DNA from: Octopus sinensis
Lineage: Eukaryota
NCBI RefSeq assembly: GCF_006345805.1
Contig: NC_043015.1
Location: 5,766,001-5,830,000, forward strand
DNA: 64,000 nucleotides
Direction: 5' to 3'
Part shown: piece by piece, positions 4,695 through 59,403 of the stretch
How the letters are laid out: each line of letters opens with the position of its first letter
Numbering within the stretch: the stretch's first letter is position 1
Made by a program: the position numbers and the translations under genes
The notes under the pieces: model-generated
Database searches by the model: none
What the model saw: the letters and a program-made list of their open reading frames with translations, nothing else
Told to the model about the DNA's origin: nothing

Positions 4695-4988
4695 GCCATT
4701 TTCAAGCCTAGCCAGGCTCATGGACCCGGTTTCTGTGGAGTATGTGTTCCCCCCAGGTGGAGGGGACGCAAGTCCATCGCAGCGTTACTCAATAAACAGG
4801 AAGAGAGAGAGTGAGATAAAGTAGTTGTGAAAGAGTACAACAGGGGTTGCCACCACCCGCTGCAGGAGCCTTGTGGAGCTTTTAGGTGTTTTCGCTCAAT
4901 AAAAACACACAACGCCCGGTCTCGGAATCGAAACCGCGATCCTCCGACTGCGAGTCCGCTGCCCAAACCACTGGGTCATTGCGCCTCC
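4695..4988 (-). mobile_element. SINE family A (tRNA head), tail type 1
   Basis: A box TGGCCCAGTGG-like and B box GGTTTCGATTCC. Same tail as 42950..43248. Confidence 0.85.
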
Positions 4989-5092
4989 ACATATTCCTCC
5001 AATATCCTATAGATATTACAAGATCTTTATTCTGAAACTGTTATTAACGTTTATTGGTTTTGTTTCAAAATTCCTGACATTGCTATACCCTT

Positions 5093-5660: not shown

Positions 5661-6621
5661 TCTCTCTATATATAAACGGCAGTTTGTCTGTCTGTGTGTC
5701 TGCGTGTCTGTCAGGTTTTACCCTCACCCTGACCACGGCCTTCAGCCGATTCTGATGAAACTTGACACACACATAGCCCAATGTCATAATTCAAAACTAA
5801 TGCAGCGAAAATTTTGAAAAGTTCCCCCTGTTCTGATGAAAAATCGGTAAATTCGACATGGGGTCGAGAATCAGAAACACAAACCACAGACTGTCTAGGG
5901 GACGCAACTTGACCTTTTTAACTCTCAATTCCATCAATATCCAGCTACTTGAAGCTATTCCTGGTGATGTCCACGTCTACAAATCTATTGATAGGACAGC
6001 AGACCCCGCCGAGCTTGCCGATTATCCTGTTGAATTCCTGAATTTACTTGAACCGCCAGGCCTGCCGCCACACATCCTGAAGTTAAAAGTCGGTGCGCCC
6101 ATTATGCACATCAGGAATTTGGTTCCACCTAAACAGTGCAACGGCATACGTCTGGTTGTGAAACATTTGCCACCACATTTAATAACGGCCACGATACTTA
6201 CCGGTTGTGGTAAGGGAGAGGACGTCTTCATTCCACGCATGCACCTTCAACCGTCGGGCGCTGACCTACCAATCCACTTCAGGCGTTCTCAGTTTCCTGT
6301 TAAACTCTGCTTTGCAATGTCCATCAATAAATCCCAAGGCCAAACGCTACAAGTCGCTGGGTTACAGTTGGGCGAACAGTGTTTCGCCCACGGTCAACTC
6401 TACGTGGGCTGTTTACGCGTTGGGAGGCGCAATGATGTTTTCATGTTTTCGCCCAAAGGGACAGCTAGCAACATCGTATACACAGAAGTATTCGAGTGAA
6501 GAGAAGACATTGCAACCTACACATGCGCCTTCGTTCCCTTGAGGGAAAGGACTAGATTGGGATTAGTCGTTGCCTACTAGGGGCTCTTACATATCCGGGC
6601 AACGCCGGGCTATGCTGCTAG
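5661..6621 (+). mobile_element. Internally deleted Helitron with PIF1-helicase remnant
   Basis: 5' TC after A, 3' CTAG before T, GC hairpin CCGG-GCAACG-CCGG at 6595..6608, helicase fragment inside. Termini shared with 51764..52133. Confidence 0.9.
5858..6499 (+). pseudogene. C-terminal fragment of Helitron RepHel PIF1-like helicase
   Basis: YPVEFLN..PPGLPPH.L.LKVGAPIM.IRNL..CNG.RL, FIPR, QFPVKLCFAMSINKSQGQTL, F.HGQLYV. The first ~25 aa derive from the non-coding 5' end, and no Rep domain is present. Confidence 0.88.
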
Positions 6622-13635: not shown

Positions 13636-13859
13636 ATATTGTTATATTTCGGAATGGTCATTTTGCCAGTTTAGCCAATAAAAAAACACGCACTATATAT
13701 TTGGTGTTATTTTGCTTCAGTGTTATTTATTTTTTTACATTAAGATTAAGATTAATGTAAAAAAAAAAATGTCACTGAAGCAAAATAACACCAAATATAT
13801 AGTGCGTGTGTTTTTATTGGCTAAACTGGCAAAATGACCATTCCGAAATATAACAATAT
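13636..13859. repeat. Near-perfect foldback palindrome (~108 bp arms, 8 bp spacer)
   Basis: 13636..13743 is the reverse complement of 13752..13859, with a few mismatches near the centre. Spacer GATTAAGA. Confidence 0.9.
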
Positions 13860-13920
13860 ATATATATATATATATAACAATATATATATATATATTATAT
13901 ATATATTATATATATATATA

Positions 13921-14458
13921 AACAAAGATAATGCGATACAATAAATTATTATAATCGCCGGTGTACCAGTACACGCCATATATTATACATATATCATTAC
14001 ATTCAAGGCGAAGAGTGCACTAGATACACAATAGCTGGATAATTTAGTGAGATGAAGATTAAAAACTTTTACAAACTTAACTTTTCTTATACTGCAGTTT
14101 CGCCAAATTCAGTAATAAAAATAGTATTTATTTACTCAGGCTGGCTCTTCAGTAAGATTCCTGTTAATGATGGAAGACCATATCAATAGACCCATGTGCG
14201 TCTATCGAAATGCTCTTTCTAAACTATTCAAAACACTGCGCAGACTCAGAACAAACCCGACAAAATAGGGGATTGTGGTATATCGTCTAACGGTCAGAAA
14301 TTATCGAGAGAATATGTAAACAAAGATAAATGCGATACAATAAAATTAATTATAATCGCCGGTGTACCAGTACACGCCATATATTATACATATATCATTA
14401 CATTCAAGGCGAAGAGTGCACTAGATACACAATAGCTGGATAAATTTAGTGAGATGAA
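13921..14458 (-). mobile_element. Retrozyme-like / pseudo-LTR-only non-autonomous element (about 1.35 units of ~400 bp)
   Basis: Terminal direct repeats 13921..14056 and 14319..14458 differ only by single-base indels. Central hammerhead, no ORF, (TA)n on both flanks. Confidence 0.72.
14085..14157 (-). ncRNA. Type I hammerhead ribozyme in a retrozyme-like element
   Basis: Minus strand TCTTA-CTGAAGA-GCCA..TGGC-GAAAC-TGCA-GTA/TAAGA. 5 bp stem I, 4 bp stem II plus an AT-rich extension, palindromic stem III ACTGCAGT, all core nucleotides present. Confidence 0.88.
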
Positions 14459-14468
14459 AATAATATAT

Positions 14469-14540
<72 letters not shown>

Positions 14541-14946
14541 GTAATATACAGTAATCCTACGACTATAGCTTATTGTACTACCCCACCGCCACGATAAGTG
14601 AAAATCAGCGAAGTAGAAAGAGTTATTTAAAATTATTTTTATAATTTCTATATATTTATTTTACTTGTTTCAGTTATTTGCCTGTGGTCATGCTGGGGTT
14701 CCACCTTAAAGGGCTTAGTCGAAGAAATTGACCTCAGGGTACATTATTTAAAGCTTAGTATTTTTTCTGTTGATATCTTTCGCCGAACCGCTAATTTACG
14801 GGGACGTAAAAATACCAACAACACCGCTTGTCAAGCATTGGTGGGGGATAGATACAGACACAAAGATACACGCTCATAGATATATACATACATATAAATA
14901 TATATATATATATGTTTGTGTATATATATATATGTATGTATGTATG

Positions 14947-15124: not shown

Positions 15125-16338
15125 ATAAATAAAATAAAACATATGCATATATATAAACATATATGTACGTACCTACCTCTACATGTACATATACACGCAT
15201 ATATGAGTACAGGACACCAAAATGACGTCGAACACAATGAGAAACGAAAACATAGACACAAACCAAAGGAACTGGACATTTTTTTAAAACAGCAAAAAAC
15301 AAATAGAGTACAGGACAATTAACACAAAGAAAAAACCCTTCTTCAGTCGCTATGGTTTCATCTACTCTACGTTTCGAAGGATAAAAGCGAGACGTATCTT
15401 CGACAAGAAACTTTCCTTCCTGCGAAAAGCAAATCAATTAAAATTCTGAGATCTTTTCGCAGAGGGGTAAAAAATGGTAACAAAAACAGGACAGTAACGA
15501 CAGTACAAATTATAAACAGTAAAAGACAGGACAAGGAAAAACATGATAAGAAGGGCTGTTAACGCCGAACGAAAAAAAGTATTGCGAACGCGGAATTTTT
15601 TATGAACGACGAGCGGAGCAAAAAGAATGTCGTCCATTACCTTGAGAGGGCCAGGCCAGAGAGACAGCAGCGGAAGTCACATCGCGGGTGAACGACGGGA
15701 AGGGAGGAGGAGGAGCAAGAGAAAGGGAGAGAAGAAGGGGAATGGCTGCGAGGAAACCATGAAGAATGGAGAGGGGGAGAGAGAGAGTGCAGAGTGAGAG
15801 AGAGGAAGATATACAGAAAGGGCTTCTTTCAGTTTCCGTCAACAAAATCCACTCATGAGGCTCTGGTTAGCCCGATGCTATTGTAGGAGACATTTGCCCA
15901 AAGTGCCATGCAGTGAGACTGACCCCTGAACGATATGGTTGGGAAGTAAGTACCAGTGAGGTTTAAAATTTACTACAGCTGTTTCAGTACCATTTTACTG
16001 ATGCGCAACATCGTAGCATATTTTCTCCATCTTCAGCTAAAATTTCAAAGACATATACAGGCAAGCTAAAACTAGAAGATTCATAAACATGATAAACTAG
16101 TTATTTTTTTAATTGAATTTATAGATAGCTCACTTTTATGAATCTTCATACTTGTGTATGTATACGTATGTATGTGGGTGTGGATGTACATCCAATTATG
16201 CATCTGTGTGCGTGTGTATGACGATGTGACTGGGTTTGTGTAAGTATATATAGTGTGTCTACATAAGTAAAATTATAAACTGATACGAGTTTCTATGTAT
16301 AGTTGAGCAAAATTACAAACTGGTACATGTATATATGT

Positions 16339-16650
16339 GGAGGCGCAATGGCCCAGTGGTTAGGGCAGCTGACTCGCGGTCGGAGGATCGCGGTTTCGAT
16401 TCCCAGACCGAGCGTTGTGTGTGTTTATTGAGCGAAAACACCTAAAAGCTCCACGAAGCTCCTGCAGGGGGTGGTGATCCCTGCTGTACTCTTTCACCAC
16501 TCTTCCTCCCACTCTTTCTTCTGTTGGCCTGCTCACTTAGCCAGCGGGGTGGCGTCATTCAAAGGCTAACACAATGCGAACGCATTGTGACCAGCGATGT
16601 GTAACAACATATGATGGTCTGGTCGGTCACGTGATCACGTGATCACGTGT
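16339..16650 (+). mobile_element. SINE family A, tail type 2
   Basis: GGAGGCGCAATGGCCCAGTGGTTAGG..GGTTTCGATTCC head, ending in (CACGTGAT)n. Confidence 0.88.
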
Positions 16651-17344
16651 ATATATATGTATGCTCTAGCTTCGAACTCATGGCGACAGTTTATGTCATT
16701 CGATACCAGAATCTGAGATGTAATCTTCTTTTATCTCCTACTGTAAACTCGGGACGATCAAAGACTTGTAAGTAGATTTGGCAGACGGAAACTGAAAGAA
16801 GCCCGTCATATATGCGTGTGTGTGTGTGTGTGTGTTTGTGTGATTGTATGTGTCTGTTTCTGTGTCTGTTTGTGTATGTGTGTGTCTTTCTGTCTGTGTT
16901 TGTCCCCACCACCTCTTCACAACCAGTGTTTACGGCTGTTCGGCCAAAGGACATGATAGAATGAGCAGCTGCCTTAAAATAAATAAGTACTGCTGTCAAT
17001 TATTGACATAATAATGACTAAAATGATTAGGACAAAATCTAAAAGAAAGAAATCTCGATTGAACCAATGTAAGTCCTTTGGCTACTTAAAACTCAGCATC
17101 CAGCTGGACGTCATCACACTAGATAAGAAGATTCGAAATACAGTTCTTGCCGATGAGATAATTGTTTGGGGCTAATTCTGCTGCAAGTATCAAAAGCTCT
17201 GGAACAAAATATTTATATGAATACTCTCTGTGTTACACTGTAACTTCTCACTGCAAGTTCTAGGATCGAATCAGATTAGAGCAGAAGTTCAAAAGGCAGT
17301 GAAGCTTCGGTTAATGAATTAAGTGACATTACTACCTGAATGGT

Positions 17345-17640
17345 GGAGGCACTTGGCCTAGTGGTTAGAGCAGCGGACTCGCGGTCGATGGATCACGGGT
17401 TCGAATCTCAGACCGGGTGATGCGTATGTTTATGAGCGAAACACCTAAGCTCTACGCGATTCGGTAGAAAGTAATGGCGAACTTCTGCTGACTCTTTCGC
17501 CACAACTTTCTCTCACTCTTTCCTCTTGCAGCTCACCTGCGACGGACCGGCGTTCCGTCCAGGTGGGGAACCTATACACCAAGAAAGCCGGGCAACCGGC
17601 CCTAATGAGCCACGGGTGGCTCTAGAAGGATTACACAAAA
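17345..17640 (+). mobile_element. SINE family A-related, tail type 3
   Basis: tRNA head GGTTCGAATC. Tail shared with 56239. Confidence 0.85.
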
Positions 17641-20059: not shown

Positions 20060-20870
20060 TACATCATAAATGACAGGTGAACAAATCTTTGCAGGGTTTG
20101 ATAGGTTCTTCCCTAAAGCACATACATAGCATTGTATCTTCAAGAAGCACATAGGGAAAGTATCGTACAATATATGCGACAATATGGAGTACTACATGCA
20201 CAAATACAACAATAAAAATACATACATACAAACAACGACCAGATACAAGGAACAAACAGATCAAATCAACACAGGGAATAGGAACAATAACAAAAAATTA
20301 ACACAATGAAATAAAAAAAACATAGATCGCGAAAGCGACAGTTATAATAGGATTCAAGCAAAAACTCAACAAAGGAATGAATACAACAGGCTATTACATC
20401 AAGAGCACTTCAGAAATTGCTAATCAACCGAAAAATCACAAAAACAAAAAGTTGCCTGATAATAACAAAAATTATAATAGTGTAAATAATTGCAGCTGTC
20501 ACAGGAAATCTGCATGTCCGCACAGGAACCAATGTATGCAAAAAAACATGTTATGCAAATGCACAATCACCACACCATAACACAAAAACGTATACATAGG
20601 AGCCTCCGAAAGCCAAGTTAAGGTCCGTTATCGCAACCATATCATCTCATGCCGAAAGATAACCTGGTGACTCGTAACATCACTGCGGACCCTAAATAGA
20701 GATTAAAGGAAGGAAAATAAAATACCAAATCGAATGGTCAAAAAGAAAAAGAAAAACTAAAATACACTATCCGATGTATGTGACCTGTGCCTTGAAGAAG
20801 TCTTGTGCTTCCTGTTAAGTAACGAAAATTTGGTAAACACACATGCTGAGAAAATATTCATTTTCAAGAT
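20060..20870 (+). mobile_element. Decayed Penelope-like element fragment (linker + GIY-YIG)
   Basis: Broken frames read GLDRFFPKAH..KVSYNICDNM, NCSCHRKSACPHRNQCMQKN, IGASESQVKVRYRNH and CDLCLEE..LVN, paralleling the intact ORF. Confidence 0.75.
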
Positions 20871-21869
20871 TCAGCTCTGTGAAATATTAATAATAATTCA
20901 GTGAAATCTCTTCCTCTCCTATTCATCCCTATCCATGTTTGCGTTTGTCGGATTGTATTTCTCTCTGTATATACACGTATGTGCGCTTGTCCGCGTATTT
21001 ACAATGTATGAATGTATGAATCTACATAAGAAAATGTATGTGTATATATATATATGCTTACTAGTGTAACTATGTCTATATATGTGTATGTATGTGAATG
21101 CGCGCACATATCCTTATATGTGGGTGTGTGTGTATGTAAGTATGTCTATGTATATGTGGATGTATGTATATATATATGTATATGTGTGTGTGTGTGTTTG
21201 TGTATATATATGTATGTGTATGCGCATATGTGTGTATATATAGATACATATATCTTTATGTATGTATGTATTATGTATGTATATATGCATGTGTGTGCGT
21301 ATGTATGTATGTGTCTGAACGTTGAATCTAAAAAGCGAGCTGAGAACAATAGGATATGTAAGCAACCATGAAGAACAAATCAGCATTACAAAGAAATAAA
21401 ATACCAATTCCTTTACAACGGCAACCACTTGTGCCAACAGCACCATAATCACCTGCGCATTCAAAGCAGTTTGCCGACGGCCCTTCGGCAAAAGCACACC
21501 CTGTTAAGCTCAGAAACTACTCATAAATTCATGCAACGATGTCCTTGAAGCAGGGGATTTTAAACTTACGGAGACAATATATACATATCGCCTGAAGAAA
21601 CACAACTTGATCTCATAATGCAGGGAAACAGTTGCATAATCAAGTACCTGCACACCTGGAGAAATACGTTGACTGGAAACAATTGTAGTAATTAAAAAAG
21701 AAATGTACAACCGTACCTCTTCTTGTTTGACTCCAAATTTTTCAATTATCTATTCGCGCACGACAGATGCCCAAACGCATAATTAGAACAGGGTAGATCT
21801 GGAGGGCGAGTTGTATACTGTACTTGACTACGTTCTTAACAGAATATACCATAACTCCATATGTATACG

Positions 21870-21903
<34 letters not shown>

Positions 21904-22101
21904 ATATTGTGAAATAGAAAGATGAATAATCTTGTTGCAGATTAATCAAAAGTTTAACCGATACCTTGGTAGCAGAAGACAGCACGGTTGGAGGTACAAC
22001 CCTATGGTGTTGCAACCGTGCGTTGGTGCGGATAATTGAATTTTAATATTATTAGTGAATTGAAGAAATGGAGTTGAACGAAGATTGAACAGAAATCGTT
22101 T

Positions 22102-22194
22102 TATTGCATTCTACACGTGTTTCGAAAGGCACAATTTACCAAATTCCGATTGAATAAGGAGACCATATTGTGTCTTTCTCTTCAGGAAGAAATA
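22102..22194 (-). ncRNA. Type I hammerhead ribozyme in the 3' pseudo-LTR (sense to the PLE ORF)
   Basis: Minus strand: ..TTC-CTGAAGA-GAAAGACACAAT..ATTGTGCCTTTC-GAAAC-ACGT-GTA/GAA. Complete core, G-C closing stem II, palindromic short stem III ACACGTGT. Predicted cut between 22112 and 22111. Confidence 0.85.
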
Positions 22195-22759
22195 GGAAAT
22201 CCGTTGGAAAAAACAAAAACAGAACAGAGGCGGAGCAAAACAAATCGAACGAGGCTCCTAAGAGCCCATGGCCAAACTGTTTATCAATGTATGTTGAAAA
22301 CGGGTGGTGGGTGCGTTGAAGATTTTAACGGGTCAGGCAGCGGTCATTCCAGTGGGTGAGAGCACGGGGTGCTTAGATGTTCTTTGTGACCGAGACTAAA
22401 GTTCTGACTATTTAAAGAATATTAGGTGTATTATATGGGGCGAGCCAAAATCTACTTAGAAACATGTGTGTGTGTACGTAAACAGCCCTACACAATGGTC
22501 ACTGCTGTAAAATCAGTAATGGTCACTGCTGTAAAATCAGTCGGGCGGCAGAAAAATATTTTATGTGTGCGTGTGTTCGTCTAATCATGCCTTGTCAAAG
22601 AAACCCCCCGTCGTCAAAAACAAACCACCATTCGTCTCCCAGGAGTAATTCCCCTTGCAATGGTTAATCATATTTCTCTTAAAAGCTATTTCAGAATTTA
22701 TTTCCAAGGGCTATTTTCATATAAGTAGTGCAACCGGGTGCAGGTATTATTTATAAGCG

Positions 22760-25474
22760 TTATTTATAAGCAAGATAAGTAAAAAGCCGCCAATGGGGGC
22801 ATCGAAAAGCCGACTGTAAAAGTCCGTTTACCATCCGGTCTCTGGTGAAAAATATATGGAAGAGTTCGGAGACACAAAGGTTGCACTTCCTTCTGCCCCT
22901 GTCAAATGGGAGGGCCACCGACAAAATTGACCATTCCAGTCTGTAGCTTGAGTTCGTATTCTTCAATCGCCATATTAGCTTGCTAAGTCCCGTGGTCTGG
23001 CATTTATTCACGTCTCGAAAAGTTGCGTAATGGTTGGAGATTCGTGAGGCCAATCTTGACGATGAGGCCCCGACATAAGCGTAGACATCTGAGTCCGTGT
23101 AAACCTTACATTCGTAGACGGCGTTTCTGATCTTGGAGTTCACCGACGTGAACCTTATTCTATTAGGATTAGTTTCTGAAATTAGAACTGCGTTACTGTT
23201 ACTATATTTGTTGCGAGAACTGCAGCCGCTTACTACTTTATTTTCCACTACGTCACTATTAACTAACGGAATAACCCCTGAATCTACACCATCACTCAGA
23301 GTGCTGTCATTGCTAGTGCCCGTGGTGCTGCTATTGCCGGAAACGATGCTGGAGTTGCTATTGGGACTCTCTACCCTAACGAGCCGAGCTGCCCTCACCT
23401 CACTACTGCCATCGTTACCGTCAATGACATCACCCTTATTTATAACTATACCCCTAGTATCTAATCCCTGGTTGGAGCTGAGATTATGAGTCACTGTACT
23501 GGCTCTCATATCATTATTACTACTATTATTATTCCTACTGAGCGTTAAACCGGGAGCGGAAGAAGCTGTGCCTCCGGAAAGAGGTGATAGGGTCTTAGTA
23601 AGCAGCCTATTATTATGGGAGGCGATTATCTGGGCGAGGTTTTTAGTTTTGGAGAAAGCTATCCTAACTTTATGCGAGTTAACCGTGGAGTAATATTTGG
23701 AATTTCTGGGGAAGTTATTGGCGATGGCTTGTCGAAACATGAGGGGGAGGTTAGTTCTAATCTGCTTACCAAAGGGAATTACAAACCATATATGATTATT
23801 CCTATTTATGTGATGGGTCGGGACGCCAGCTCTCGCATTCGGGTGGGTGATTCTCGGATGAATAACGGGTTTTGGGTTAGTGTGAGATCCCCCGGACCGA
23901 TAATTATCCTTGTTCGCTAAATTAAATGCGGGAGCGACTGCCCCAGCACCCGCCGCTCTCCCGTCACTACTTAAATTATTAATGTTATTATAGACGGCCC
24001 TATCCTGATGACCGAATGATGGCATCGGAAGGGCCGGATCCATATAAATTACCTTCTGCCTATAACCGGCCTTGGATAGTGCGGCGTTATAAAATTCCGC
24101 TTTCTGCATAAAAATATCGGCACTAGCGGACAAGCCAGACAATCTTAGAGAGATGTTTTTAACCAAATTGTCTGTTACGGTTTTGGCATGATTGGAGAAG
24201 ACACTGACATAATTCAAATTAGTGGAAGGCTTATGGTAAGGGCAATATGAGTCGCTATTAAGGTTAAGTGTAACGTCTAGGAAATTAGCCTTGGTGAGTT
24301 CATTATCAAAAACTATATTCATGCCCATTCTATTAAAAAACCTAGCTAACCTGCTCTTAGTTTTCTGCACTATTCTGTTCGTGGTGTTTTGCAGGTAAAA
24401 CAGATAATCGTCACGATACAGGCCGCCCGCGATCTCCGGGAACTGGTCGGACAATTCGTAGAGAATATATATTCCGACCAAATCGGCTATCTGCGCACTA
24501 TCCGAACTACCCATAGGCACATCAAATTCATTGGAAGTATCTTTACGGATCCACAACTTATTATCAAACTTAATAAACGATTTCCTGGCAACTAAAATGA
24601 TATCTATTTCTTCTCTGGTGAGGCCAGCCTTGTTGTGAGCATGACAAAGGGCCTTATTTAGTACACTAGGGTTAATCGAGGGGTAGAAGCTGGCGATATC
24701 AAACTGAATGAACCTAGTACGGTTCTTATTGGGGATGGAAGAGAACCACTTCACTACCTGCGAGGAGTTGGCCCAGAGGCTGAGCTTCAGCTTGTTTACT
24801 AAACTAGGGATATATTTATCTAAAATGTACTTACTGATTATCCCGATATCAGAGCTAGCAGGGCATATGAGTCTTAGCGCTGGGTTTGTGTGGAAGTTCG
24901 GTTTATGGTCCTTCACTATAAATCTAGGTTGCTTAGGGCTAAGCGGCTGCGTTCTCATTTGAATTCCGTGTTTAAACATTATCTCCTTAATTTCCAAGTT
25001 TACCTTCCTCAGAGTACTCCAATTGGTTGTTCTATAATTTTTCTTGATCTCTTTACCGAGTAAATCTAGGTACTGCTTAATGGGTAGCTTGTATGTGTTC
25101 CTGGTCTTGTCGGACTGGACCAGGACTCCGTCCGTTCTATTGATGTCCTTGGTAATTTTATCTAGGTATCTGAGGTGGGCATTTCTCCTGGGTGACTTCC
25201 TAAACTTAATCTTTCTAACTATGTCCCACAAGTCGTCCTCAAACTTCTTCAGTCTTGGGTTAGGTGGCGGCGTATCCAATGTTTTAAAAAGCCGGCCATA
25301 TTCGGACGATGCTGTTGTCCGGTTCGATTTTAGATCTTCGTTCTCGTGGAAGAAAACTAGCCATCTTATCCGGTTTATGAATGCGTTGGTCTTACAAACC
25401 AACTCCTTAAGGAAGGCGTCCTTCGGTGGTATAGGAATATCCTTAAGGGACGCATCAATCTCGAACAACTCCAT
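22760..25474 (-). CDS. Penelope-like element (PLE) polyprotein: reverse transcriptase + GIY-YIG endonuclease, intact 904 aa ORF
   Basis: Uninterrupted ORF. RT motifs FDIASFYPSI, VPMGSSDSAQIADL, LYRDD, NFLDVTL. C-terminal GIY-YIG-like block AVYECKV..YAYVGASSSRLASRISNH..LSKLIW..WSIL..CNLCVSE..VN. This domain order is typical of Penelope-clade PLEs. Confidence 0.95.
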   Translation of the reverse strand: MELFEIDASLKDIPIPPKDAFLKELVCKTNAFINRIRWLVFFHENEDLKSNRTTASSEYGRLFKTLDTPPPNPRLKKFEDDLWDIVRKIKFRKSPRRNAHLRYLDKITKDINRTDGVLVQSDKTRNTYKLPIKQYLDLLGKEIKKNYRTTNWSTLRKVNLEIKEIMFKHGIQMRTQPLSPKQPRFIVKDHKPNFHTNPALRLICPASSDIGIISKYILDKYIPSLVNKLKLSLWANSSQVVKWFSSIPNKNRTRFIQFDIASFYPSINPSVLNKALCHAHNKAGLTREEIDIILVARKSFIKFDNKLWIRKDTSNEFDVPMGSSDSAQIADLVGIYILYELSDQFPEIAGGLYRDDYLFYLQNTTNRIVQKTKSRLARFFNRMGMNIVFDNELTKANFLDVTLNLNSDSYCPYHKPSTNLNYVSVFSNHAKTVTDNLVKNISLRLSGLSASADIFMQKAEFYNAALSKAGYRQKVIYMDPALPMPSFGHQDRAVYNNINNLSSDGRAAGAGAVAPAFNLANKDNYRSGGSHTNPKPVIHPRITHPNARAGVPTHHINRNNHIWFVIPFGKQIRTNLPLMFRQAIANNFPRNSKYYSTVNSHKVRIAFSKTKNLAQIIASHNNRLLTKTLSPLSGGTASSAPGLTLSRNNNSSNNDMRASTVTHNLSSNQGLDTRGIVINKGDVIDGNDGSSEVRAARLVRVESPNSNSSIVSGNSSTTGTSNDSTLSDGVDSGVIPLVNSDVVENKVVSGCSSRNKYSNSNAVLISETNPNRIRFTSVNSKIRNAVYECKVYTDSDVYAYVGASSSRLASRISNHYATFRDVNKCQTTGLSKLIWRLKNTNSSYRLEWSILSVALPFDRGRRKCNLCVSELFHIFFTRDRMVNGLLQSAFRCPHWRLFTYLAYK

Positions 25475-25762
25475 TATTGGTATCGGTTAAAATAGCAGTT
25501 TCTTGACGAAACGGTATGTATTTTGTGAAATAGAAAGATGAATAATCTTGTTGCAGATTAATCAAAAGTTTAACCGATACCTAAGCACCCCGTGCTCTCA
25601 CCCACTGGAATTACCGCTGCCTGACCCGTTAAAATCTTCAACGCACCCACCACCCGTTTTCAACATACATTGATAAACAGTTTGGCCATGGGCTCTTAGG
25701 AGCCTCGTTCGATTTGTTTTGCTCCGCCTCTGTTCTGTTTTTGTTTTTTCCAACGGATTTCC

Positions 25763-25855
25763 TATTTCTTCCTGAAGAGAAAGACACAGTATGGTCTCCT
25801 TATTCAATCGGAATTTGGTAAATTGTGCCTTTCGAAACACGTGTAGAATGCAATA
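25763..25855 (+). ncRNA. Type I hammerhead ribozyme in the inverted 5' pseudo-LTR (antisense to the ORF)
   Basis: CTGAAGA at 25772..25778, stem II GAAAGACACAGT/ATTGTGCCTTTC, GAAAC at 25834, ACGT-GTA. Predicted cut after 25845. Confidence 0.85.
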
Positions 25856-25910
25856 AAACGATTTCTCTTCAATCTTCGTTCAACTCCATTTCTTCAATTC
25901 ACTAATAATA

Positions 25911-25970
<60 letters not shown>

Positions 25971-26579: not shown

Positions 26580-26823
26580 GTGTGCGTGTGTGTGCGTGTG
26601 TGTGCGTGTGTGTGCGTGTGTGTGTAGATGTCTACTTGTATACATATGAAAATTATGTAATTTACGCTCTTTTTTGCTATCGATTCTTCTCAATATACAC
26701 AAACATACGTGTGTATGTAAATGTGTATCACTATGCAGGTGTATGTATGCCTGAAGAAATGTATTCATATATATATATACTTGTTTATATATATGTATAT
26801 ATATATACATATATATATATATG

Positions 26824-26863
<40 letters not shown>

Positions 26864-26877
26864 TATATGTATATACA

Positions 26878-26953
<76 letters not shown>

Positions 26954-27409
26954 GACAGAGTGAGAGAAAGAGAGAGAGTGGGAGAGAGAGACACACAGAC
27001 AGATAGACAGAGAGAGATTGATAGGTGTGTGTGTATATTCATATATATATTTCTAGAAAACTTTACACACGAAGAATATTTTTTTTTTGCTCTACATTAT
27101 AACCTTGATCAATAATTTGATCTTTCACGACGTTTTGTTTGTTTGTTTGTCTTGTATGAATGTGTGCATGTGTGTGTGTGTGTGTTGTGTGTGTGCGTGT
27201 GTGTGCGTGTGTGTGCGTGTGTGTGTAGATGTCTACTTGTATACATATGAAAATTATGTAATTTACGCTCTTTTTTGCTATCGATTCTTCTCAATATACA
27301 CAAACATACGTGTGTATGTAAATGTGTATCACTATGCAGGTGTATGTATGCCTGAAGAAATGTATTCATATATATATATACTTGTTTATATATATGTATA
27401 TATATATAC

Positions 27410-27478
<69 letters not shown>

Positions 27479-27492
27479 TATATGTATATACA

Positions 27493-27571
<79 letters not shown>

Positions 27572-27800
27572 GACAGAGTGAGAGAAAGAGAGAGAGTGGG
27601 AGAGAGAGACACACAGACAGATAGACAGAGAGAGATTGATAGGTGTGTGTGTATATTCATATATATATTTCTAGAAAACTTTACACACGAAGAATATTTT
27701 TTTTTTGCTCTACATTATAACCTTGATCAATAATTTGATCTTTCACGACGTTTTGTTTGTTTGTTTGTCTTGTATGAATGTGTGCATGTGTGTGTGTGTG
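26580..27800. repeat. Tandem duplication of a ~600 bp microsatellite-rich unit
   Basis: GTAGATGTCTACTTGTATAC..TCTTGTATGAATGTGTGC occurs twice. Differences are mainly in microsatellite length. Confidence 0.92.
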
Positions 27801-28510
27801 TGTTTGTGTGTGTTAGATAGCATGTTTTGCTAGCTATGTGTGCGCGCGTGCAACTAGTTCTTCAATAGGTTCACCTGAATACACATCTACACGAAGAAAT
27901 CGATCAAAATATCTAGTTCCTATTCAGAACACTAAAAAATTACTAAACAATAGCGAACAATATATCTCCATAATAAATCCTTAAAATCGATACATTTATG
28001 CATTAATATTCAACATTATTAGTGGGTGACAGATTTATGAATCTAATCCACTGACAATTTATTAGGTCTTGTCATTAATATTACCATTTATCACTATGTT
28101 TCCTACAGTTTTATGCGTGTTTCTACTGCATTACTAAATGAGCTTTTCAGAGGTGTGTGTAAGCATTGCCATTTGAGGATCTACAAATTTGTTTTCATAA
28201 AACATCAGATTTACTTCGTTGTTTATATTCTTTGCTTGCACGTGGACTTATTTTAATGTTTTCTCGGGTTGTCTAGTTTATTTTTTATACGAGTTGTATT
28301 ATTTCGTCGATGAGTGCTGTTTTGCTCTTTCGTAAGTGTTCCGTGCTTGAAATTGTATTGTCGGGCAATAATTGAGTAGACTTTTTAGCTAATGGGTTGT
28401 CTTATAGTAAAATGTACAATACCAGCTGTTTGGGTGGTTATGTATTACCTTATATAATTTATGTAATTACATATATATAATTAGGTTGGGAAAACAAAAG
28501 CTCTATCGTT

Positions 28511-34313: not shown

Positions 34314-35325
34314 AATCTTTTGATGTTTTCTTGAGCCTCTGTGTTCACATTAATTTCCCAATATTTGGAAAATAATAACCTTACACTTGAAGTGATAAAA
34401 TGAATTTAACGCTAATTAGCACCAATTAAGAATCACCTGTTCTAGTCATTAGCATTCGTGTATAAAGTATAAGGTGTATTTATAATCGTATGTTAACAAC
34501 AAGCGAAATTCAGAGACTGCTAGCCCTATGTTTCAGACAATTACCGTTTCGTTTCCGAATACCAGGTGACCAAATCGTTACTCAATGTTTCACACATCCG
34601 TGTTGCTAAAAGTAAAACTATCACACTTTTATATGTTGATTCAATTGGAAGTGATATGTAGGTTTTGAGTTTTTGCTTATTAGTCGGGAGCTGTGTGTGA
34701 TTCACATGTATGTGTTTAAAACTGATATTTAAGACGGGTACACAATCTCACATTTCCTCGGGAGGTATATCCGATTAAAACTACCCAATATAATTTAATT
34801 AACTCTTTTATCGAACCAAGAATGTTAAATGGTAAGATTAACCATGACATGATGTTAATGGAGAACGTAAATGGAAGTTTAGGTTTAATCTGTATTCACA
34901 GACACGTTCAAACAGCCGACTACAGCCGTTGAGTAACACTCTAGTACTTCCATGGCAAAATAAATAAGAAATGACATAAAAACGGCAATGAAATTTTTTG
35001 ATGAGAACATCGAATAAACTGCCATAAACTATTTGGTTACAGTCAAGATAATTAGGCTAATCGTTAGTACACCGGACACAACGCTTAGCAGCATTTCGTC
35101 AGTTGTTAGGTACTGAGTTCAAATTCTTCTGAGATCGACTTTGCCTTTCCTTCTGTCGGGGTCGATGCAATAAATACAAGTCGAGCACTGGCGTCGATGT
35201 AATCGACTAGCCACCATCAACCAATATTTCAGGCTTTTTCTCCAAACAGAAAGGATTGTTCTTGGGACTCTGACGCAAATTTTCTCTGGACGTTGTTGAT
35301 ATCAATAGTCGTTTCTCACATATGT

Positions 35326-35705
35326 GGAGGCGCAATGGCCCAGTGGTTAGGGCAGCGGACTCGCGGTCATAGGATCGCGGTTTCGATTCCCAGACCGGGC
35401 GTTGTGAGTGTTTATTGAGCGAAAACACCTAAAAGTTCCACGAGGCTCCGGCAGGGGATGGTGGTGATCCCTGCTGTACTCTTTCACCACAATTTTCTCT
35501 CACTCTTACTTCCTGTTTCTGTTGTACCTGTATTTCAAAGGGCCGGCCTTGTCACTCTCTGTGTCACGCTGAATATCCCCGAGAACTACGCTAAGGGTAC
35601 ACGTGTCTGTGGAGTGCTCAGCCACTTACACGTTAATTTCATGAGCAGGCTGTTCCGTTGATTCGGATCAACCGGAACCCTCGTCGTCGTAACCGACGGA
35701 GTGCT
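35326..35705 (+). mobile_element. SINE family A, tail type 4
   Basis: Same head and body as 16339, with an unrelated tail. Confidence 0.88.
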
Positions 35706-42949: not shown

Positions 42950-43248
42950 GCCCTTTTCAAGACTAGCCAGGCTCATGGGCCCGGTTTACCGATTTCTATG
43001 GCGTATGTGTTCCCCCTATCTGGACGGGATGTCAGTCCACCGCAGCGTTACTCAAGAAACAGTAAGAAAGAGTGAGAGAAAGTTGGGGTGAAAGAGTACA
43101 ATAGGCTCGCCACCACCCTCTGCCGGAGCCTCGTGGAGCTTCAGGTGTTTTCACTCAATAAACGCACGCAACGCCCAGTCTGGGAATCGAAACCGCTATC
43201 CTCCGAGCACGAGTTCGCTGCCCTAACCACTGGGCCATTGCGCCTCCA
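42950..43248 (-). mobile_element. SINE family A, tail type 1
   Basis: Matches 4695..4988. Confidence 0.85.
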
Positions 43249-43879
43249 CTCTACGCTTTTTATAATGATAATAATCTTCAATATATTAAATAATTATAAT
43301 ATTCAATAATACCTGCATAGCAGGCTTTTAAAGCTCGATTTATATAATTTAATTACTAATGCATATAACAGGCATTAAATAATATTCTTTTACACTCTAG
43401 GTACAAGGCGCAAAATTTTGGGAGAGGGGGTGGCCAGTTGATTAAATCGACTCCAGTACGCAACTGGTACTTAATTTATCGACCCCGAAATGATGAAAGG
43501 TAAAGTCGACATCGGTGGAATTAGGCATTAAATAATCTTGAAAGATATATTTTTCAGTGGACTTCATTATGTATTACTGTCGTTTATATTTTCATCATCG
43601 ATGTTAGAATTCTCATAAATTCCGAATAATTTTCTGTCTTTTTTCTTCTTTTCTTTTTTAAAATTCGACTTTTTTTAAATTTTTGTTTTATCCCAATAAT
43701 CCTGTGTTGTGAGTAGCATCATAATTATTATTGTATTACATATTGAATTACGAAGCTGGGTTTGAAAATGAGATTTCATTACGTCTGATCCTCATGAATT
43801 TATGGCTAAACTATTTCGTTTCACTTTGGAAACGTTTCGGATTTTGCGTAATTTACATCACGATGTATGTGAGGATGAA

Positions 43880-46499: not shown

Positions 46500-47092
<593 letters not shown>

Positions 47093-51554: not shown

Positions 51555-51590
<36 letters not shown>

Positions 51591-51750
51591 ACGGGCTTCT
51601 TTCAGTTTCCGTCTACCAAATCCACTCACTAGGCTTTAGTAGGCCCGAGGCTATAGTAGAAGACAATTGCCCAAGGTGTCACGCAGTGGGACTGAACCCA
51701 GAACCATGTGGTTGGTAAGCAAGCTACTTACCATACAGCCACTCCTACGC
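51345..51750 (-). mobile_element. SINE family B
   Basis: Full-length copy. Confidence 0.88.
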
Positions 51751-56238: not shown

Positions 56239-56540
56239 GGAGACATATGGCTTAGTGGCTAGAACAGCGGACTCGCGGTCGAGGAATCGTGGGTTCGAAT
56301 TTCAGACCGGATGATGTGTGTATTTATGAGCGAAACACCTAAGCTCCACGCGGCTCCAGCAGAAGTTAATGGCGAACTTCTGTTGACTCTTTCGCCACAA
56401 CTATCTCTCACTCTTTCCTCCTGCATCTTGCAGCTCACCTGCGACAGACCGGCGTTCCGTGCAGGTGGAGAACCTATACGCCAAGGAAACCGGAAAACCG
56501 GTCCTTATGACCCAGGCATGGCTCGAGAAGGAACAAAAAT
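56239..56540 (+). mobile_element. SINE family A-related, tail type 3
   Basis: Matches 17345..17640. Confidence 0.85.
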
Positions 56541-58560: not shown

Positions 58561-59107
58561 AAACCTTCTTTGAGCTACTTTTAAATTTGGATGAATCCTA
58601 AACTTCTAATATAATTAATCGTTGGTCTTCATCGCAGCCAGATACGATGCTGATGTTTCGAGAATGGATCACTGCAATGGACATCCGCATTTACCTGCTG
58701 GTGAGAGTTCAATAGATACTTTGCAGAAAAAATTGAATGAGACATGTTTCCACACACAAAACACTGGATTGTTCAGACACTCAATACAAGTGTATTTTCT
58801 CAGTTCCCGACCTTCTCACTACAATCATATTGTTTATGTAAACCCATTTAACCAACTTTATTTCGTCACTCTTATTGGAGATGTTCCTCCATTTTTCTTC
58901 TATCTTTCCTTTGACTGGGTAGAACAAATTTTGCCTCCAAACCTTTCGACTGCTTTCAATACACAACTTCCTGAAACATAGTATAGACTCAAGAAATGCT
59001 TTCGTTCTCCTCTGCAAAAGGATGGTAATTAGCCCATCCTCACTATACATTCCGCTCATAACCATTCGTTTCGCGAGTAATATTTTCTATTGTACATAAA
59101 CAAACGT

Positions 59108-59403
59108 GGAAGTGCAATGGCCCAGTGATTAGGGCAACGGACACGCTGTTTCGATTCCCAAACCAGGCACTTTGAGTGTTTATTGAGCGAAAACCTCTAA
59201 AGCTCCACGAGGCTCCGGAAGGGGTGGTGGTGATCCCTGCTGTACTCTTTTGCCACAACTTTCTCTCACTCTTTCTTCTGCTGGCCCGCTCCTTAGCAAG
59301 TTGGGTGGCGTCATTTGAAGGCTAAAACAATGCGAAGCGCATTGTGACCAGCGATGTGTAGCAACATCGGATAGCCTGGTCGGTCACGGTGATCACGGTG
59401 ATA
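59108..59403 (+). mobile_element. SINE family A, tail type 2
   Basis: Matches 16339..16650. Confidence 0.85.

What the first reader, a model, noticed from the sequence alone, without database searches (positions are those of the whole stretch)
13921..14458. Retrozyme-like hammerhead element: 1.35 copies of a ~400 nt non-coding unit
Seen: terminal direct repeats ~398 bp apart, no ORF, and one complete type I hammerhead on the minus strand (TCTTA CTGAAGA GCCA..TGGC GAAAC TGCA GTA/TAAGA, cut between 14090 and 14089), flanked by (TA)n. Established: animal non-LTR retrozymes are tandem non-coding units with type I hammerheads and palindromic stem III. They yield monomeric or circular RNAs and are thought to be copied by Penelope-like RTs. 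Inference: a greater-than-unit-length, circularly permuted insert is what reverse transcription around a ~400 nt circular RNA would leave. This would be a ribozyme-RNA/PLE parasite pair, and I do not know whether it has been described in this lineage.
Basis: partly seen in the sequence, partly recalled or inferred. Interest (0 to 1): 0.85.

Follow-up and report, generated by a model that had tools for sequence, protein, structure and literature searches.

The report
Hammerhead-bearing Penelope-type retroelement tail in microsatellite
The repeat and the hammerhead ribozyme motif are real, but this looks like an ordinary non-coding Penelope-type retrotransposon insertion of a kind already described in many invertebrates, and its "1.35 copies" shape is that family's usual insertion signature, not evidence of a circular RNA template.

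Summary
A 146-150 nt segment occurs twice (13914-14059 and 14312-14461, 95% identical, period 398-402). There is no meaningful ORF, and (TA)n lies on both sides. One type I hammerhead sits on the minus strand (14157..14085, cut 14090|14089). It has a long helix II and an 8-nt palindromic helix III (ACUGCAGU), which is the dimer-type variant typical of Penelope-like elements (PLEs).

My strict descriptor finds 3 such motifs in the window and none in 1000 random windows. The other two belong to a full-length PLE 7.4 kb away on the same strand (unit 21907-25522, 904-aa telomerase-like RT with a C-terminal GIY-YIG-like domain, Hydra-clade motifs). That ORF-bearing 3.6-kb element is also inserted in (TA)n and also exceeds unit length (68-nt upstream partial copy plus an inverted 337-nt copy). 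Greater-than-unit length is therefore the published PLE pseudo-LTR signature and does not point to a circular template.

The unit shares only hammerhead architecture with this PLE, not sequence. I could not retrieve any other copy of the unit. Whether it is a truly ORF-less ~400-nt family (retrozyme in the broad sense) or two nested 5'-truncated tails of another PLE stays open.

Verdict: new member of a known kind, low interest.

The parts
13856..13919 (.). TA-rich microsatellite flanking the 3' end of the element (element sense is the minus strand); presumed target
   Evidence: read directly
13920..14317 (-). Downstream complete copy, about 398 nt and non-coding. On the minus strand it reads: 5' part 14317..14158, hammerhead 14157..14085, 3' part 14084..13920. 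The boundary is uncertain by about 6 nt because it merges with TA repeats.
13914..14059 (-). 3'-terminal segment A of the complete copy, the part that is repeated
   Evidence: 95.3% identical to 14312-14461
14085..14157 (-). Type I hammerhead motif, PLE/dimer type. Helix I 5 bp; core CUGAAGA; helix II closed by GCCAG/UUGGC, 44 nt in all; GAA; 8-nt palindrome ACUGCAGU; A17 at 14090; predicted cut between 14090 and 14089.
   Evidence: a homodimer with an 8-bp intermolecular helix III is predicted at -35.7 against 2 x -15.4 kcal/mol
14312..14461 (-). Upstream 5'-truncated partial copy (A'), equal to the last ~150 nt of the unit. It stops 26-30 nt short of the position equivalent to the hammerhead cut site and carries no hammerhead.
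14462..14541 (.). TA-rich microsatellite flanking the 5' end of the element
21907..25522 (-). Context: full-length Penelope-like element (PLE-1), 3616-nt unit. ORF 22760-25474 (904 aa) with RT motifs FDIASFYPSI and YRDD, and C-terminal GIY-YIG-like motifs. Its own hammerhead lies at 22109-22188, with the cut at 22112|22111, 205 nt before the 3' end.
25515..25582 (-). PLE-1 upstream partial tandem copy (pseudo-LTR), equal to the 3'-terminal 68 nt 21899-21966; 97% identical
   Evidence: (D6)
25581..25917 (+). PLE-1 inverted 5'-truncated copy: the reverse complement of 22040-22376, 98.8% identical. It includes a second copy of the hammerhead (25769-25848, plus strand) and is followed by (TA)n at about 25918-25965.
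20061..21868 (+). Context: decayed PLE of a different family (PLE-2). Endonuclease remnant with stop codons at 20061-20853. Degenerate hammerhead-like motif at 21592-21687 (CTGAAGA ... GAA ACAATTGT A). It ends about 180 nt later in the same (TA)n as PLE-1, tail to tail.
15974..16036 (-). Possible relic: hammerhead core plus 8-nt palindrome (CTGAAGA ... GAA ACAGCTGT A) with a degenerate helix II; no ORF remnant nearby

Best explanation
The locus is a non-coding insertion made by the Penelope-like-element (PLE) retrotransposition machinery into a (TA)n microsatellite. Read on the minus strand, it consists of a 5'-truncated partial copy (the last ~150 nt) followed head-to-tail by a ~398-nt copy. 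This is the pseudo-LTR partial tandem that PLE insertions normally show.

The ~398-nt copy carries a PLE-type minimal type I hammerhead about 170 nt from its 3' end. This matches the geometry in the two ORF-related PLEs of the same window.

With its 8-nt palindromic helix III, the ribozyme should be poorly active alone and should cleave only when paired with a second copy, either in a multimeric transcript or in trans. This locus has only one hammerhead, so it is most likely a dead-end copy and not a source of monomeric or circular RNA.

Shown here: the repeat, the motif, the (TA)n target, and the parallel with an ORF-bearing PLE in the window.

Inferred: mobilisation by a PLE RT/GIY-YIG protein, and the template being a longer-than-unit RNA (multimeric transcript or template jump).

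Undecided: whether the 398 nt are a complete ORF-less non-autonomous unit (a retrozyme in the broad sense of a PLE-tail derivative) or simply a 5'-truncated tail of an autonomous PLE of another family. I lean slightly to the truncated tail.
For: (1) The motif is far beyond chance. The palindromic-helix-III descriptor gives 3 hits in the window against 0 in 1000 random windows. Core plus palindrome alone gives 5 against 0.08 expected.

(2) The other strict hits lie in the 3' UTR of PLE-1 and in its inverted copy. They share the architecture: CUGAAGA, a long helix II of 44-55 nt, GAA, an ACNNNNGU palindrome, and a GUA cut site.

(3) PLE-1 is itself greater than unit length and sits in (TA)n: a 68-nt direct terminal copy and a 337-nt inverted copy. 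This matches the published PLE structure (PMC8557442 section 6 and Fig. 2 legend; PMC11167929).

(4) The PLE-1 ORF is a reverse transcriptase. The AlphaFold model has pLDDT 76, and the best Foldseek matches are telomerase RTs at E 3e-9. The family alignment carries the RWK, DKT, CxCX5C and CxxC..E..N..CxH motifs that define the Hydra clade, which is reported to insert into (TA)n and always to carry hammerheads (PMC8557442 section 11).

(5) Related ORFs on other contigs have hammerheads with palindromic helix III downstream of the ORF. One (L007) also has an inverted copy upstream. The octopod Argonauta hians copy (L001) has direct copies on both sides, 3217 nt apart.

(6) The distance from the hammerhead's 3' edge to the 3' end of the element is similar in all three: 165 nt (unit), 202 nt (PLE-1) and about 180 nt (PLE-2).

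(7) Hammerhead dimers with an 8-bp helix III are predicted to be more stable than two monomers. This fits the published behaviour of PLE hammerheads (PMC4209133).
Against: - No second copy of the unit could be found. The family status, the true 5' end and any attachment to an ORF are therefore untested.
- The unit's termini show no significant similarity to the PLE-1 termini (p 0.81 and 0.41). PLE-1 is therefore not shown to be its parent or its mobiliser.
- Rfam does not recognise the hammerhead, and self-cleavage is untested.
- How PLE partial tandems arise is itself unsettled, so a circular or rolling template is not excluded.
Confidence: 0.62

Rival explanations
1. This is the reader's model: a genuine animal non-LTR retrozyme. 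An ORF-less ~400-nt family is transcribed from tandem arrays, cut by the hammerhead, ligated into circular RNA, and copied by a PLE reverse transcriptase running more than once around the circle. That process would leave this 1.37-unit insert.
For: - The size (398 nt), low GC (34%), lack of ORF and type I hammerhead fit the published description (PMC7229834).
- A candidate RT partner class is present in the window.
- The insert starts 26-30 nt short of the hammerhead cut-site equivalent. It is therefore nearly as long as a transcript that begins at a cleaved upstream copy.
- Nothing in the window contradicts an ORF-less family.
Against: - There is only one hammerhead and 1.37 units here, not an array.
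- The unit RNA is not more self-paired than shuffles (z -1.8 / -1.25).
- The hammerhead is the minimal PLE type, without an evident loop 1-loop 2 arrangement.
- The same greater-than-unit-length structure occurs in a 3.6-kb coding PLE nearby, so the structure is not diagnostic of a circle.
- No further copies were retrievable.
Confidence: 0.25
2. A single-copy insertion (or PLE tail) was later partly duplicated in place by replication slippage or unequal exchange in the surrounding microsatellite. The repeat would then have nothing to do with the integration mechanism.
For: The locus is embedded in slippage-prone (TA)n. The window has other local duplications, for example 26586-27804 with a period of 601-618 bp.
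Against: - The duplicated segment is exactly the 3'-terminal part of the element, placed directly upstream of it. PLE integration produces this arrangement, and it is repeated in PLE-1.
- Slippage between (TA)n tracts would be expected to duplicate whole units including the flank.
Confidence: 0.08
3. The hammerhead is a chance match in AT-rich DNA, and the repeat is an unrelated low-copy duplication.
For: Rfam gives no hammerhead hit. The fold of the isolated motif is only marginally better than shuffles (z -1.8).
Against: - 0 of 1000 random windows match the descriptor.
- Independent motifs with the same peculiar architecture occur in PLE tails in the same window and in relatives elsewhere.
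- Rfam (at E<=1) also misses the hammerheads I found next to related PLE ORFs, which limits the weight of its negative.
Confidence: 0.03

Closest known systems
Minimal / dimeric hammerhead ribozymes of Penelope-like elements (Cervera & de la Pena 2014, PMC4209133)
   Same: Type I topology; conserved CUGANGA and GAAA core; G10.1-C11.1 pair; larger-than-usual helix II; short helix I (5 bp) without a defined loop 1; small palindromic helix III that allows an active dimer; location in the terminal repeat or 3' region of a PLE-type insertion; often found as single scattered motifs.
   Different: Helix II is much longer here: 44 nt in the unit and 55-62 nt in PLE-1 and the Argonauta copy, against the 7-8 bp stems described. 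No unpaired nucleotide is needed between positions 9 and 10.1. Activity is untested.
Hydra-clade Penelope-like elements (Craig et al. 2021, PMC8557442)
   Same: For the neighbouring ORF element: a single ORF; C-terminal GIY-YIG-like domain without the CCHH motif; DKT motif; CxxC and CxH motifs around the conserved E and N; insertion in (TA)n; a hammerhead present; partial tandem plus inverted 5' copy; occurrence in molluscs. The finding's unit shares the target, the tandem structure and the hammerhead type.
   Different: The finding's unit has no ORF and no sequence similarity to the neighbouring PLE outside the ribozyme core. The neighbouring element is 3.6 kb, not under 3 kb, because of two low-complexity insertions in the ORF (residues 488-557 and 632-770). 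The window ORF reads RWL where the family consensus is RWK.
Animal non-LTR retrozymes (Cervera & de la Pena 2020, PMC7229834; Li et al. 2026 preprint 10.64898/2026.07.22.740005)
   Same: 150-450 bp non-coding units, GC below 50%, type I hammerhead, co-occurrence with autonomous PLEs, proposed derivation from PLE terminal repeats. Isolated monomer copies are reported as common.
   Different: There is no array with one ribozyme per unit at this locus. The RNA is not notably self-paired. The ribozyme is the PLE minimal type, not the canonical invertebrate type. Circular RNA and multi-copy family status could not be tested.
Newt/salamander satellite 2 hammerhead repeats (as summarised in PMC7229834)
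   Same: ~330-nt unit; type I hammerhead with a very weak helix III capped by a palindromic loop; efficient cleavage only as dimers.
   Different: Those are long tandem satellites with conserved loop-loop contacts. This is a 1.37-unit insertion in a microsatellite in what is probably a cephalopod.

Membership tests
Hammerhead ribozyme, type I | Catalytic core C3-U4-G5-A6-N7-G8-A9 and G12-A13-A14, with A15.1-U16.1 and a non-G at position 17 | tested here: met
   CUGAAGA 14152-14146; GAA 14101-14099; A15.1 at 14098 pairs with U16.1 at 14091; A17 at 14090
Hammerhead ribozyme, type I | Three helices around the core, with helix I open (5' and 3' ends in helix I) and a G10.1-C11.1 pair closing helix II | tested here: met
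   Helix I TCTTA/TAAGA, 5 bp. Helix II GCCAG/UUGGC plus a distal stem. Helix III is 2 bp plus a tetraloop as a monomer, or 8 bp as a dimer.
Hammerhead ribozyme, type I | Match to the curated covariance model (Rfam Hammerhead families) | tested here: not met
   No hit at gathering score or at E<=10. As a control, the hammerheads I found beside related PLE ORFs (L004, L005) are also missed at E<=1, so the model does not cover this variant.
Hammerhead ribozyme, type I | Site-specific self-cleavage | not testable with these tools
   Needs in vitro transcription of monomer and dimer constructs with core mutants.
PLE-type minimal (dimeric) hammerhead | Palindromic positions 15.2-16.2 and loop 3, long helix II, short helix I, residence in a PLE terminal region | tested here: met
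   ACUGCAGU is an 8-nt palindrome. The dimer is predicted 4.9 kcal/mol more stable than two monomers. The same features occur in the PLE-1 tail and in relatives L001, L004, L005 and L007. Criteria from PMC4209133.
Animal non-LTR retrozyme | Short (150-450 bp) non-coding unit with GC below 50% | tested here: met
   398 nt, 34% GC, longest ORF 45-52 aa
Animal non-LTR retrozyme | Head-to-tail tandem copies, each with its own hammerhead, so that a monomer can be excised | tested here: not met
   1.37 units and a single hammerhead; the partial copy stops before the ribozyme. This holds for this locus only; other loci could not be examined.
Animal non-LTR retrozyme | Multi-copy family in the genome | not testable with these tools
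   No other copy in the window. The source genome is not in the searchable collections: a peptide search with six-frame fragments found nothing, and DNA pattern scans found nothing.
Animal non-LTR retrozyme | Stable, highly self-paired RNA | tested here: inconclusive
   MFE -91.1 (linear) and -84.6 (circular) kcal/mol; z -1.8 and -1.25 against 200 dinucleotide shuffles; 61-63% of bases paired
Animal non-LTR retrozyme | Expression as linear and circular ~unit-length RNA | not testable with these tools
   No transcriptome data are available here.
Penelope-like element insertion (structure only) | Partial tandem: a 5'-truncated copy directly upstream of a longer copy (pseudo-LTR) | tested here: met
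   On the minus strand, 14461..14312 (the 3'-terminal 150 nt) is directly followed by 14317..13920. Criterion from PMC8557442.
Penelope-like element insertion (structure only) | Insertion bias for (TA)n microsatellites (Hydra, Naiad and Neptune clades) | tested here: met
   TA-rich tracts on both sides, and the same for PLE-1 and PLE-2
Penelope-like element insertion (structure only) | RT plus GIY-YIG ORF | tested here: not met
   A profile HMM of 110 family proteins run against the six-frame window gives no hit in 13900-14470, even with filters off and E<=10. It does find PLE-1 and PLE-2. The weak tblastn matches are at noise level. The unit is therefore non-autonomous or a truncated tail.
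Hydra-clade PLE (for the neighbouring ORF 22760-25474) | RWK and DKT motifs, CxCX5C linker, GIY-YIG without CCHH, CxxC and CxH around the conserved E and N, (TA)n target, hammerhead | tested here: met
   The family consensus shows RWKAFF, ADKT, CNCRxxxxC, YIG..R..NH, CxLC..E..N..CRH. The window ORF has DKT, CNLC, CPH and RWL. The fold matches telomerase RTs best. The (TA)n target and the hammerhead are shown. No reference Hydra sequences were available for a phylogeny, and Pfam and PDB sequence searches are nearly blank.

The most novel reading that the evidence does not exclude
The unit is the first glimpse of a cephalopod retrozyme family: an ORF-less ~400-nt RNA with a long-helix-II, dimer-only hammerhead. 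It would circularise and be copied by Hydra-clade PLE reverse transcriptases through rolling reverse transcription into (TA)n microsatellites. The coding PLEs' own partial tandems might then arise the same way.
Probability: 0.2. Interest if true: 0.45.

Novelty: new member of a known kind. Interest (0 to 1): 0.22.

Why it matters
If the reading is right, little changes. It adds one more lineage (probably an octopod cephalopod) and a long-helix-II variant to the known association of dimer-type hammerheads with Penelope-like elements.

Its modest value is as an example. One 12-kb stretch holds a full-length PLE, a decayed PLE and an ORF-less hammerhead insertion. All three sit in (TA)n, and the two intact ones have the same greater-than-unit-length structure. 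This argues that such structure reflects the PLE integration mechanism and not a circular template. The point matters for current models of how animal retrozymes move.

Tried and rejected
- **Rfam at gathering and at E<=10 around the locus:** only spurious microRNA-like hits on hairpins and microsatellites. The negative was shown to be uninformative.
- **More copies of the unit:**
  - blastn against the window found none.
  - An exact look-up of the 45-aa ORF found nothing on record.
  - A search of 5.8 billion proteins with concatenated six-frame fragments of the unit, hoping for spurious ORFs called on other copies, found none.
  - A hammerhead-specific DNA pattern in metagenome and prokaryote genome collections found none, as expected for an animal sequence.
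- **Hidden coding remnant in the unit:** tblastn with 110 PLE proteins gave suggestive short matches (e.g. R*TIYHNPLFC vs RKTIYYNPPFC). These sit at noise level, occur on both strands, and are not recovered by a family profile HMM. Rejected.
- **Similarity between the unit's ends and the PLE-1 ends:** not significant. One 13/15 match after the cut site has p about 0.04 before correction for five tests.
- **Unusually stable rod-like RNA:** not found.
- **Leave-one-out covariance model from PLE hammerheads:** abandoned because MAFFT misaligned the 3' core across helix II regions of very different length.
- **Pfam, NCBI-style and PDB sequence searches for the 904-aa ORF:** nearly blank. Its nature was settled by motifs, family alignment and fold search instead.

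Full report
**1. The observation**

The sequence at 13921-14458 is as described. blastn of the region against the window shows 13914-14059 repeated at 14312-14461, 95.3% identical over 150 columns, E 1.6e-62. Small indels make the period 398-402. The insert is about 548 bp, or 1.37 units. It lies between TA-rich microsatellite tracts at about 13856-13919 and 14462-14541. Its longest ORFs are 45-52 aa.

The minus strand reads TCTTA CTGAAGA G-CCAG...(helix II, 44 nt)...TTGG-C GAA ACTGCAGT A|TAAGA. That gives a complete hammerhead core:
- a G10.1-C11.1 pair
- a 5-bp open helix I, so type I topology
- an 8-nt palindromic helix III

**2. Is the motif more than chance?**

A permissive type I descriptor of my own finds only this site in the window. 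Nine of 300 first-order Markov random windows give any hit.

A second descriptor requires a fully palindromic helix III, with helix I and helix II each at least 3 bp. It finds three sites in the window and none in 1000 random windows.

Dropping the helix requirements and asking only for the core plus GAA plus an 8-10-nt palindrome gives five sites, against 0.08 expected per window.

Rfam reports no hammerhead at gathering score or at E<=10. Rfam, searched at E<=1, also fails on the hammerheads I later found next to related retrotransposon ORFs on other contigs. The curated models therefore do not cover this short-helix-III variant, and the negative carries little weight.

**3. What the surroundings show**

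The two other strict hits belong to one element 7.4 kb away on the same strand. ORF 22760-25474 (904 aa) has the reverse transcriptase motifs FDIASFYPSI and YRDD. It also has C-terminal VYECKV...YVGASSSRLASRISNH, which reads as GIY-YIG.

- Pfam and PDB sequence searches are almost blank.
- The ORF has 109 homologs of about 700 aa. The best named one is from the octopod Argonauta hians.
- An AlphaFold model built on 36 of them has mean pLDDT 76. Its best Foldseek matches are telomerase reverse transcriptases at E 3e-9, followed by DRT, retron and group II intron RTs. PLE RTs are the known sister group of telomerase RTs (PMC8557442).
- The family consensus carries RWK, DKT, a CxCX5C linker, and CxxC/CxH around the conserved E and N, without the CCHH motif. 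These are the features given for the Hydra clade of PLEs. That clade is reported from cnidarians, molluscs, echinoderms and arthropods, inserts almost always into (TA)n, and always carries hammerheads (PMC8557442, section 11).

The element's anatomy is the textbook PLE structure. The unit is 3616 nt (21907-25522, minus strand). It is preceded by a 68-nt copy of its own 3' end (25515-25582 = 21899-21966, 97%). Before that lies an inverted 337-nt copy of part of its 3' UTR (25581-25917 = reverse complement of 22040-22376, 98.8%). The whole sits between (TA)n tracts.

Its hammerhead (22109-22188, cut at 22112|22111) reads TTC CTGAAGA GAAAG...(55 nt)...CTTTC GAA ACACGTGT A|GAA. This is the same architecture as in the finding, including N7 = A, the GUA cut site and an ACNNNNGT palindrome.

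A profile HMM of the family, run against the six-frame window, also finds a decayed endonuclease remnant of a different PLE family at 20061-20853 on the plus strand (E 6e-17). Its own degenerate hammerhead-like motif lies at 21592-21687. The element ends about 180 nt later in the same (TA)n as PLE-1, tail to tail.

Relatives on other contigs carry hammerheads with palindromic helix III downstream of the ORF (L004, L005, L007). L007 also has an inverted copy upstream. The Argonauta copy (L001) has direct copies on both sides, 3217 nt apart, with a helix II of about 62 nt.

**4. What the finding most likely is**

On the minus strand, the finding consists of the last ~150 nt of a unit followed directly by a 398-nt copy. 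This is a 5'-truncated copy upstream of a longer copy, in (TA)n, with a PLE-type hammerhead whose 3' edge lies 165 nt from the element's 3' end. The corresponding distances are 202 nt in PLE-1 and about 180 nt in PLE-2.

This is the pattern described for PLE insertions: high 5' truncation, partial tandems that form pseudo-LTRs, and microsatellite targets (PMC8557442). The in vitro work on a Poseidon element proposes multimeric transcripts as templates, with internal initiation of reverse transcription (PMC11167929).

A 3.6-kb coding PLE in the same window shows the same greater-than-unit-length structure. That structure therefore cannot be taken as evidence for a ~400-nt circular template.

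The profile HMM finds no coding remnant in the unit. Some suggestive short tblastn matches are at noise level. The unit shares no significant sequence with PLE-1 beyond the ribozyme core, so it derives from another family.

With one locus, I cannot tell a complete ORF-less ~400-nt element from a 5'-truncated 3' UTR tail of a longer PLE. The PLE-1 3' UTR is 853 nt, so a 398-nt tail would be entirely non-coding. The minimal PLE-type ribozyme and the single copy make me lean slightly to the truncated tail.

**5. How it would work**

Both hammerheads have helix III sequences that are 8-nt palindromes. RNAcofold predicts homodimers joined by an 8-bp intermolecular helix III with helix II intact. 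The predicted energies are -35.7 against 2 x -15.4 kcal/mol for the unit, and -40.9 against 2 x -15.4 for PLE-1.

This matches published PLE hammerheads, which are nearly inactive as monomers and weakly active as dimers (PMC4209133).

The locus has only one ribozyme. It therefore cannot release a monomer from its own transcript and is best seen as a dead-end copy. The unit RNA is not unusually structured (z -1.8 linear, -1.25 circular).

**6. Comparison with known systems, and novelty**

The closest known things are:
- PLE minimal hammerheads (PMC4209133)
- Hydra-clade PLEs (PMC8557442)
- animal non-LTR retrozymes (PMC7229834).

The lineage is probably a cephalopod. A Helitron-type Pif1 fragment in the window has its best named relatives in Octopus bimaculoides, and the PLE ORF's best named relative is in Argonauta hians.

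I found no paper describing hammerhead elements specifically in cephalopods. Molluscs in general are covered. The only mildly unusual trait is the very long helix II, which the cephalopod relatives share.

I rate it a new member of a known kind, with low interest.

**7. What remains open**

Still untested are family status, the true 5' end, attachment to an ORF, RNA forms and catalytic activity. All of these need the source genome, RNA data or bench work (see next steps).

The retrozyme/circular-RNA reading keeps about a one-in-four chance.

Noticed in passing
window 21907-25917 (minus strand): Apparently intact full-length Penelope-like element with Hydra-clade motifs. It has a 904-aa uninterrupted ORF with two long low-complexity insertions (residues 488-557 and 632-770, modelled at pLDDT below 50), its own dimer-type hammerhead, a 68-nt pseudo-LTR and an inverted 337-nt copy at 98.8% identity. 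The high identity suggests a recent insertion.
   Followed up: yes
window 20061-21868 (plus strand): Decayed PLE of a different family (endonuclease remnant with stop codons, degenerate hammerhead-like motif at 21592-21687). It ends tail to tail with the full-length PLE in one (TA)n tract, so two independent insertions share the same microsatellite.
   Followed up: partly
window 15974-16036 (minus strand): Lone hammerhead core plus 8-nt palindrome (CTGAAGA ... GAA ACAGCTGT A) with a degenerate helix II, no ORF remnant and no other copy in the window. Possibly an old PLE tail relic.
   Followed up: partly
window 13636-13859: 224-nt near-perfect hairpin (108-nt arms, 96% complementary, 8-nt loop), directly next to the (TA)n that flanks the finding. 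It is single-copy in the window. It attracts spurious plant microRNA hits in Rfam far below their gathering scores. Its nature is unknown (foldback or MITE-like?).
   Followed up: partly
window 16333-16525, 35320-35517, 4804-4994, 43058-43249, 59092-59402, 17343-17526, 56247-56420: Short interspersed repeat family with a tRNA-like head (GGCCCAGTGGTTAGGGC...GGTTCGATTCC-like); seven copies at 75-91% identity. ARAGORN calls none of them a tRNA gene.
   Followed up: partly
window 15809-15950 and eight further sites (e.g. 51582-51723, 46741-46880, 2157-2285): A second short repeat family of about 140 nt, nine copies in the window counting 15809-15950, at 75-82% identity. One copy abuts the lone hammerhead-like motif.
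   Followed up: no
window 5858-6499 (plus strand): ORF with a Pif1 helicase 2B domain (Pfam E 8e-13), presumably a Helitron fragment. Closest unnamed relatives are 72-86% identical; the closest named ones are from Octopus bimaculoides at 59%.
   Followed up: partly
window 26586-27804: Local tandem duplication with a 601-618 bp period (300 nt at 98% and 270 nt at 100% identity), within microsatellite-rich DNA.
   Followed up: no
whole window: Very high density of (TA)n, (TG)n, (GA)n and tetranucleotide microsatellites. Most long ORFs in the six-frame list are translations of these repeats.
   Followed up: no
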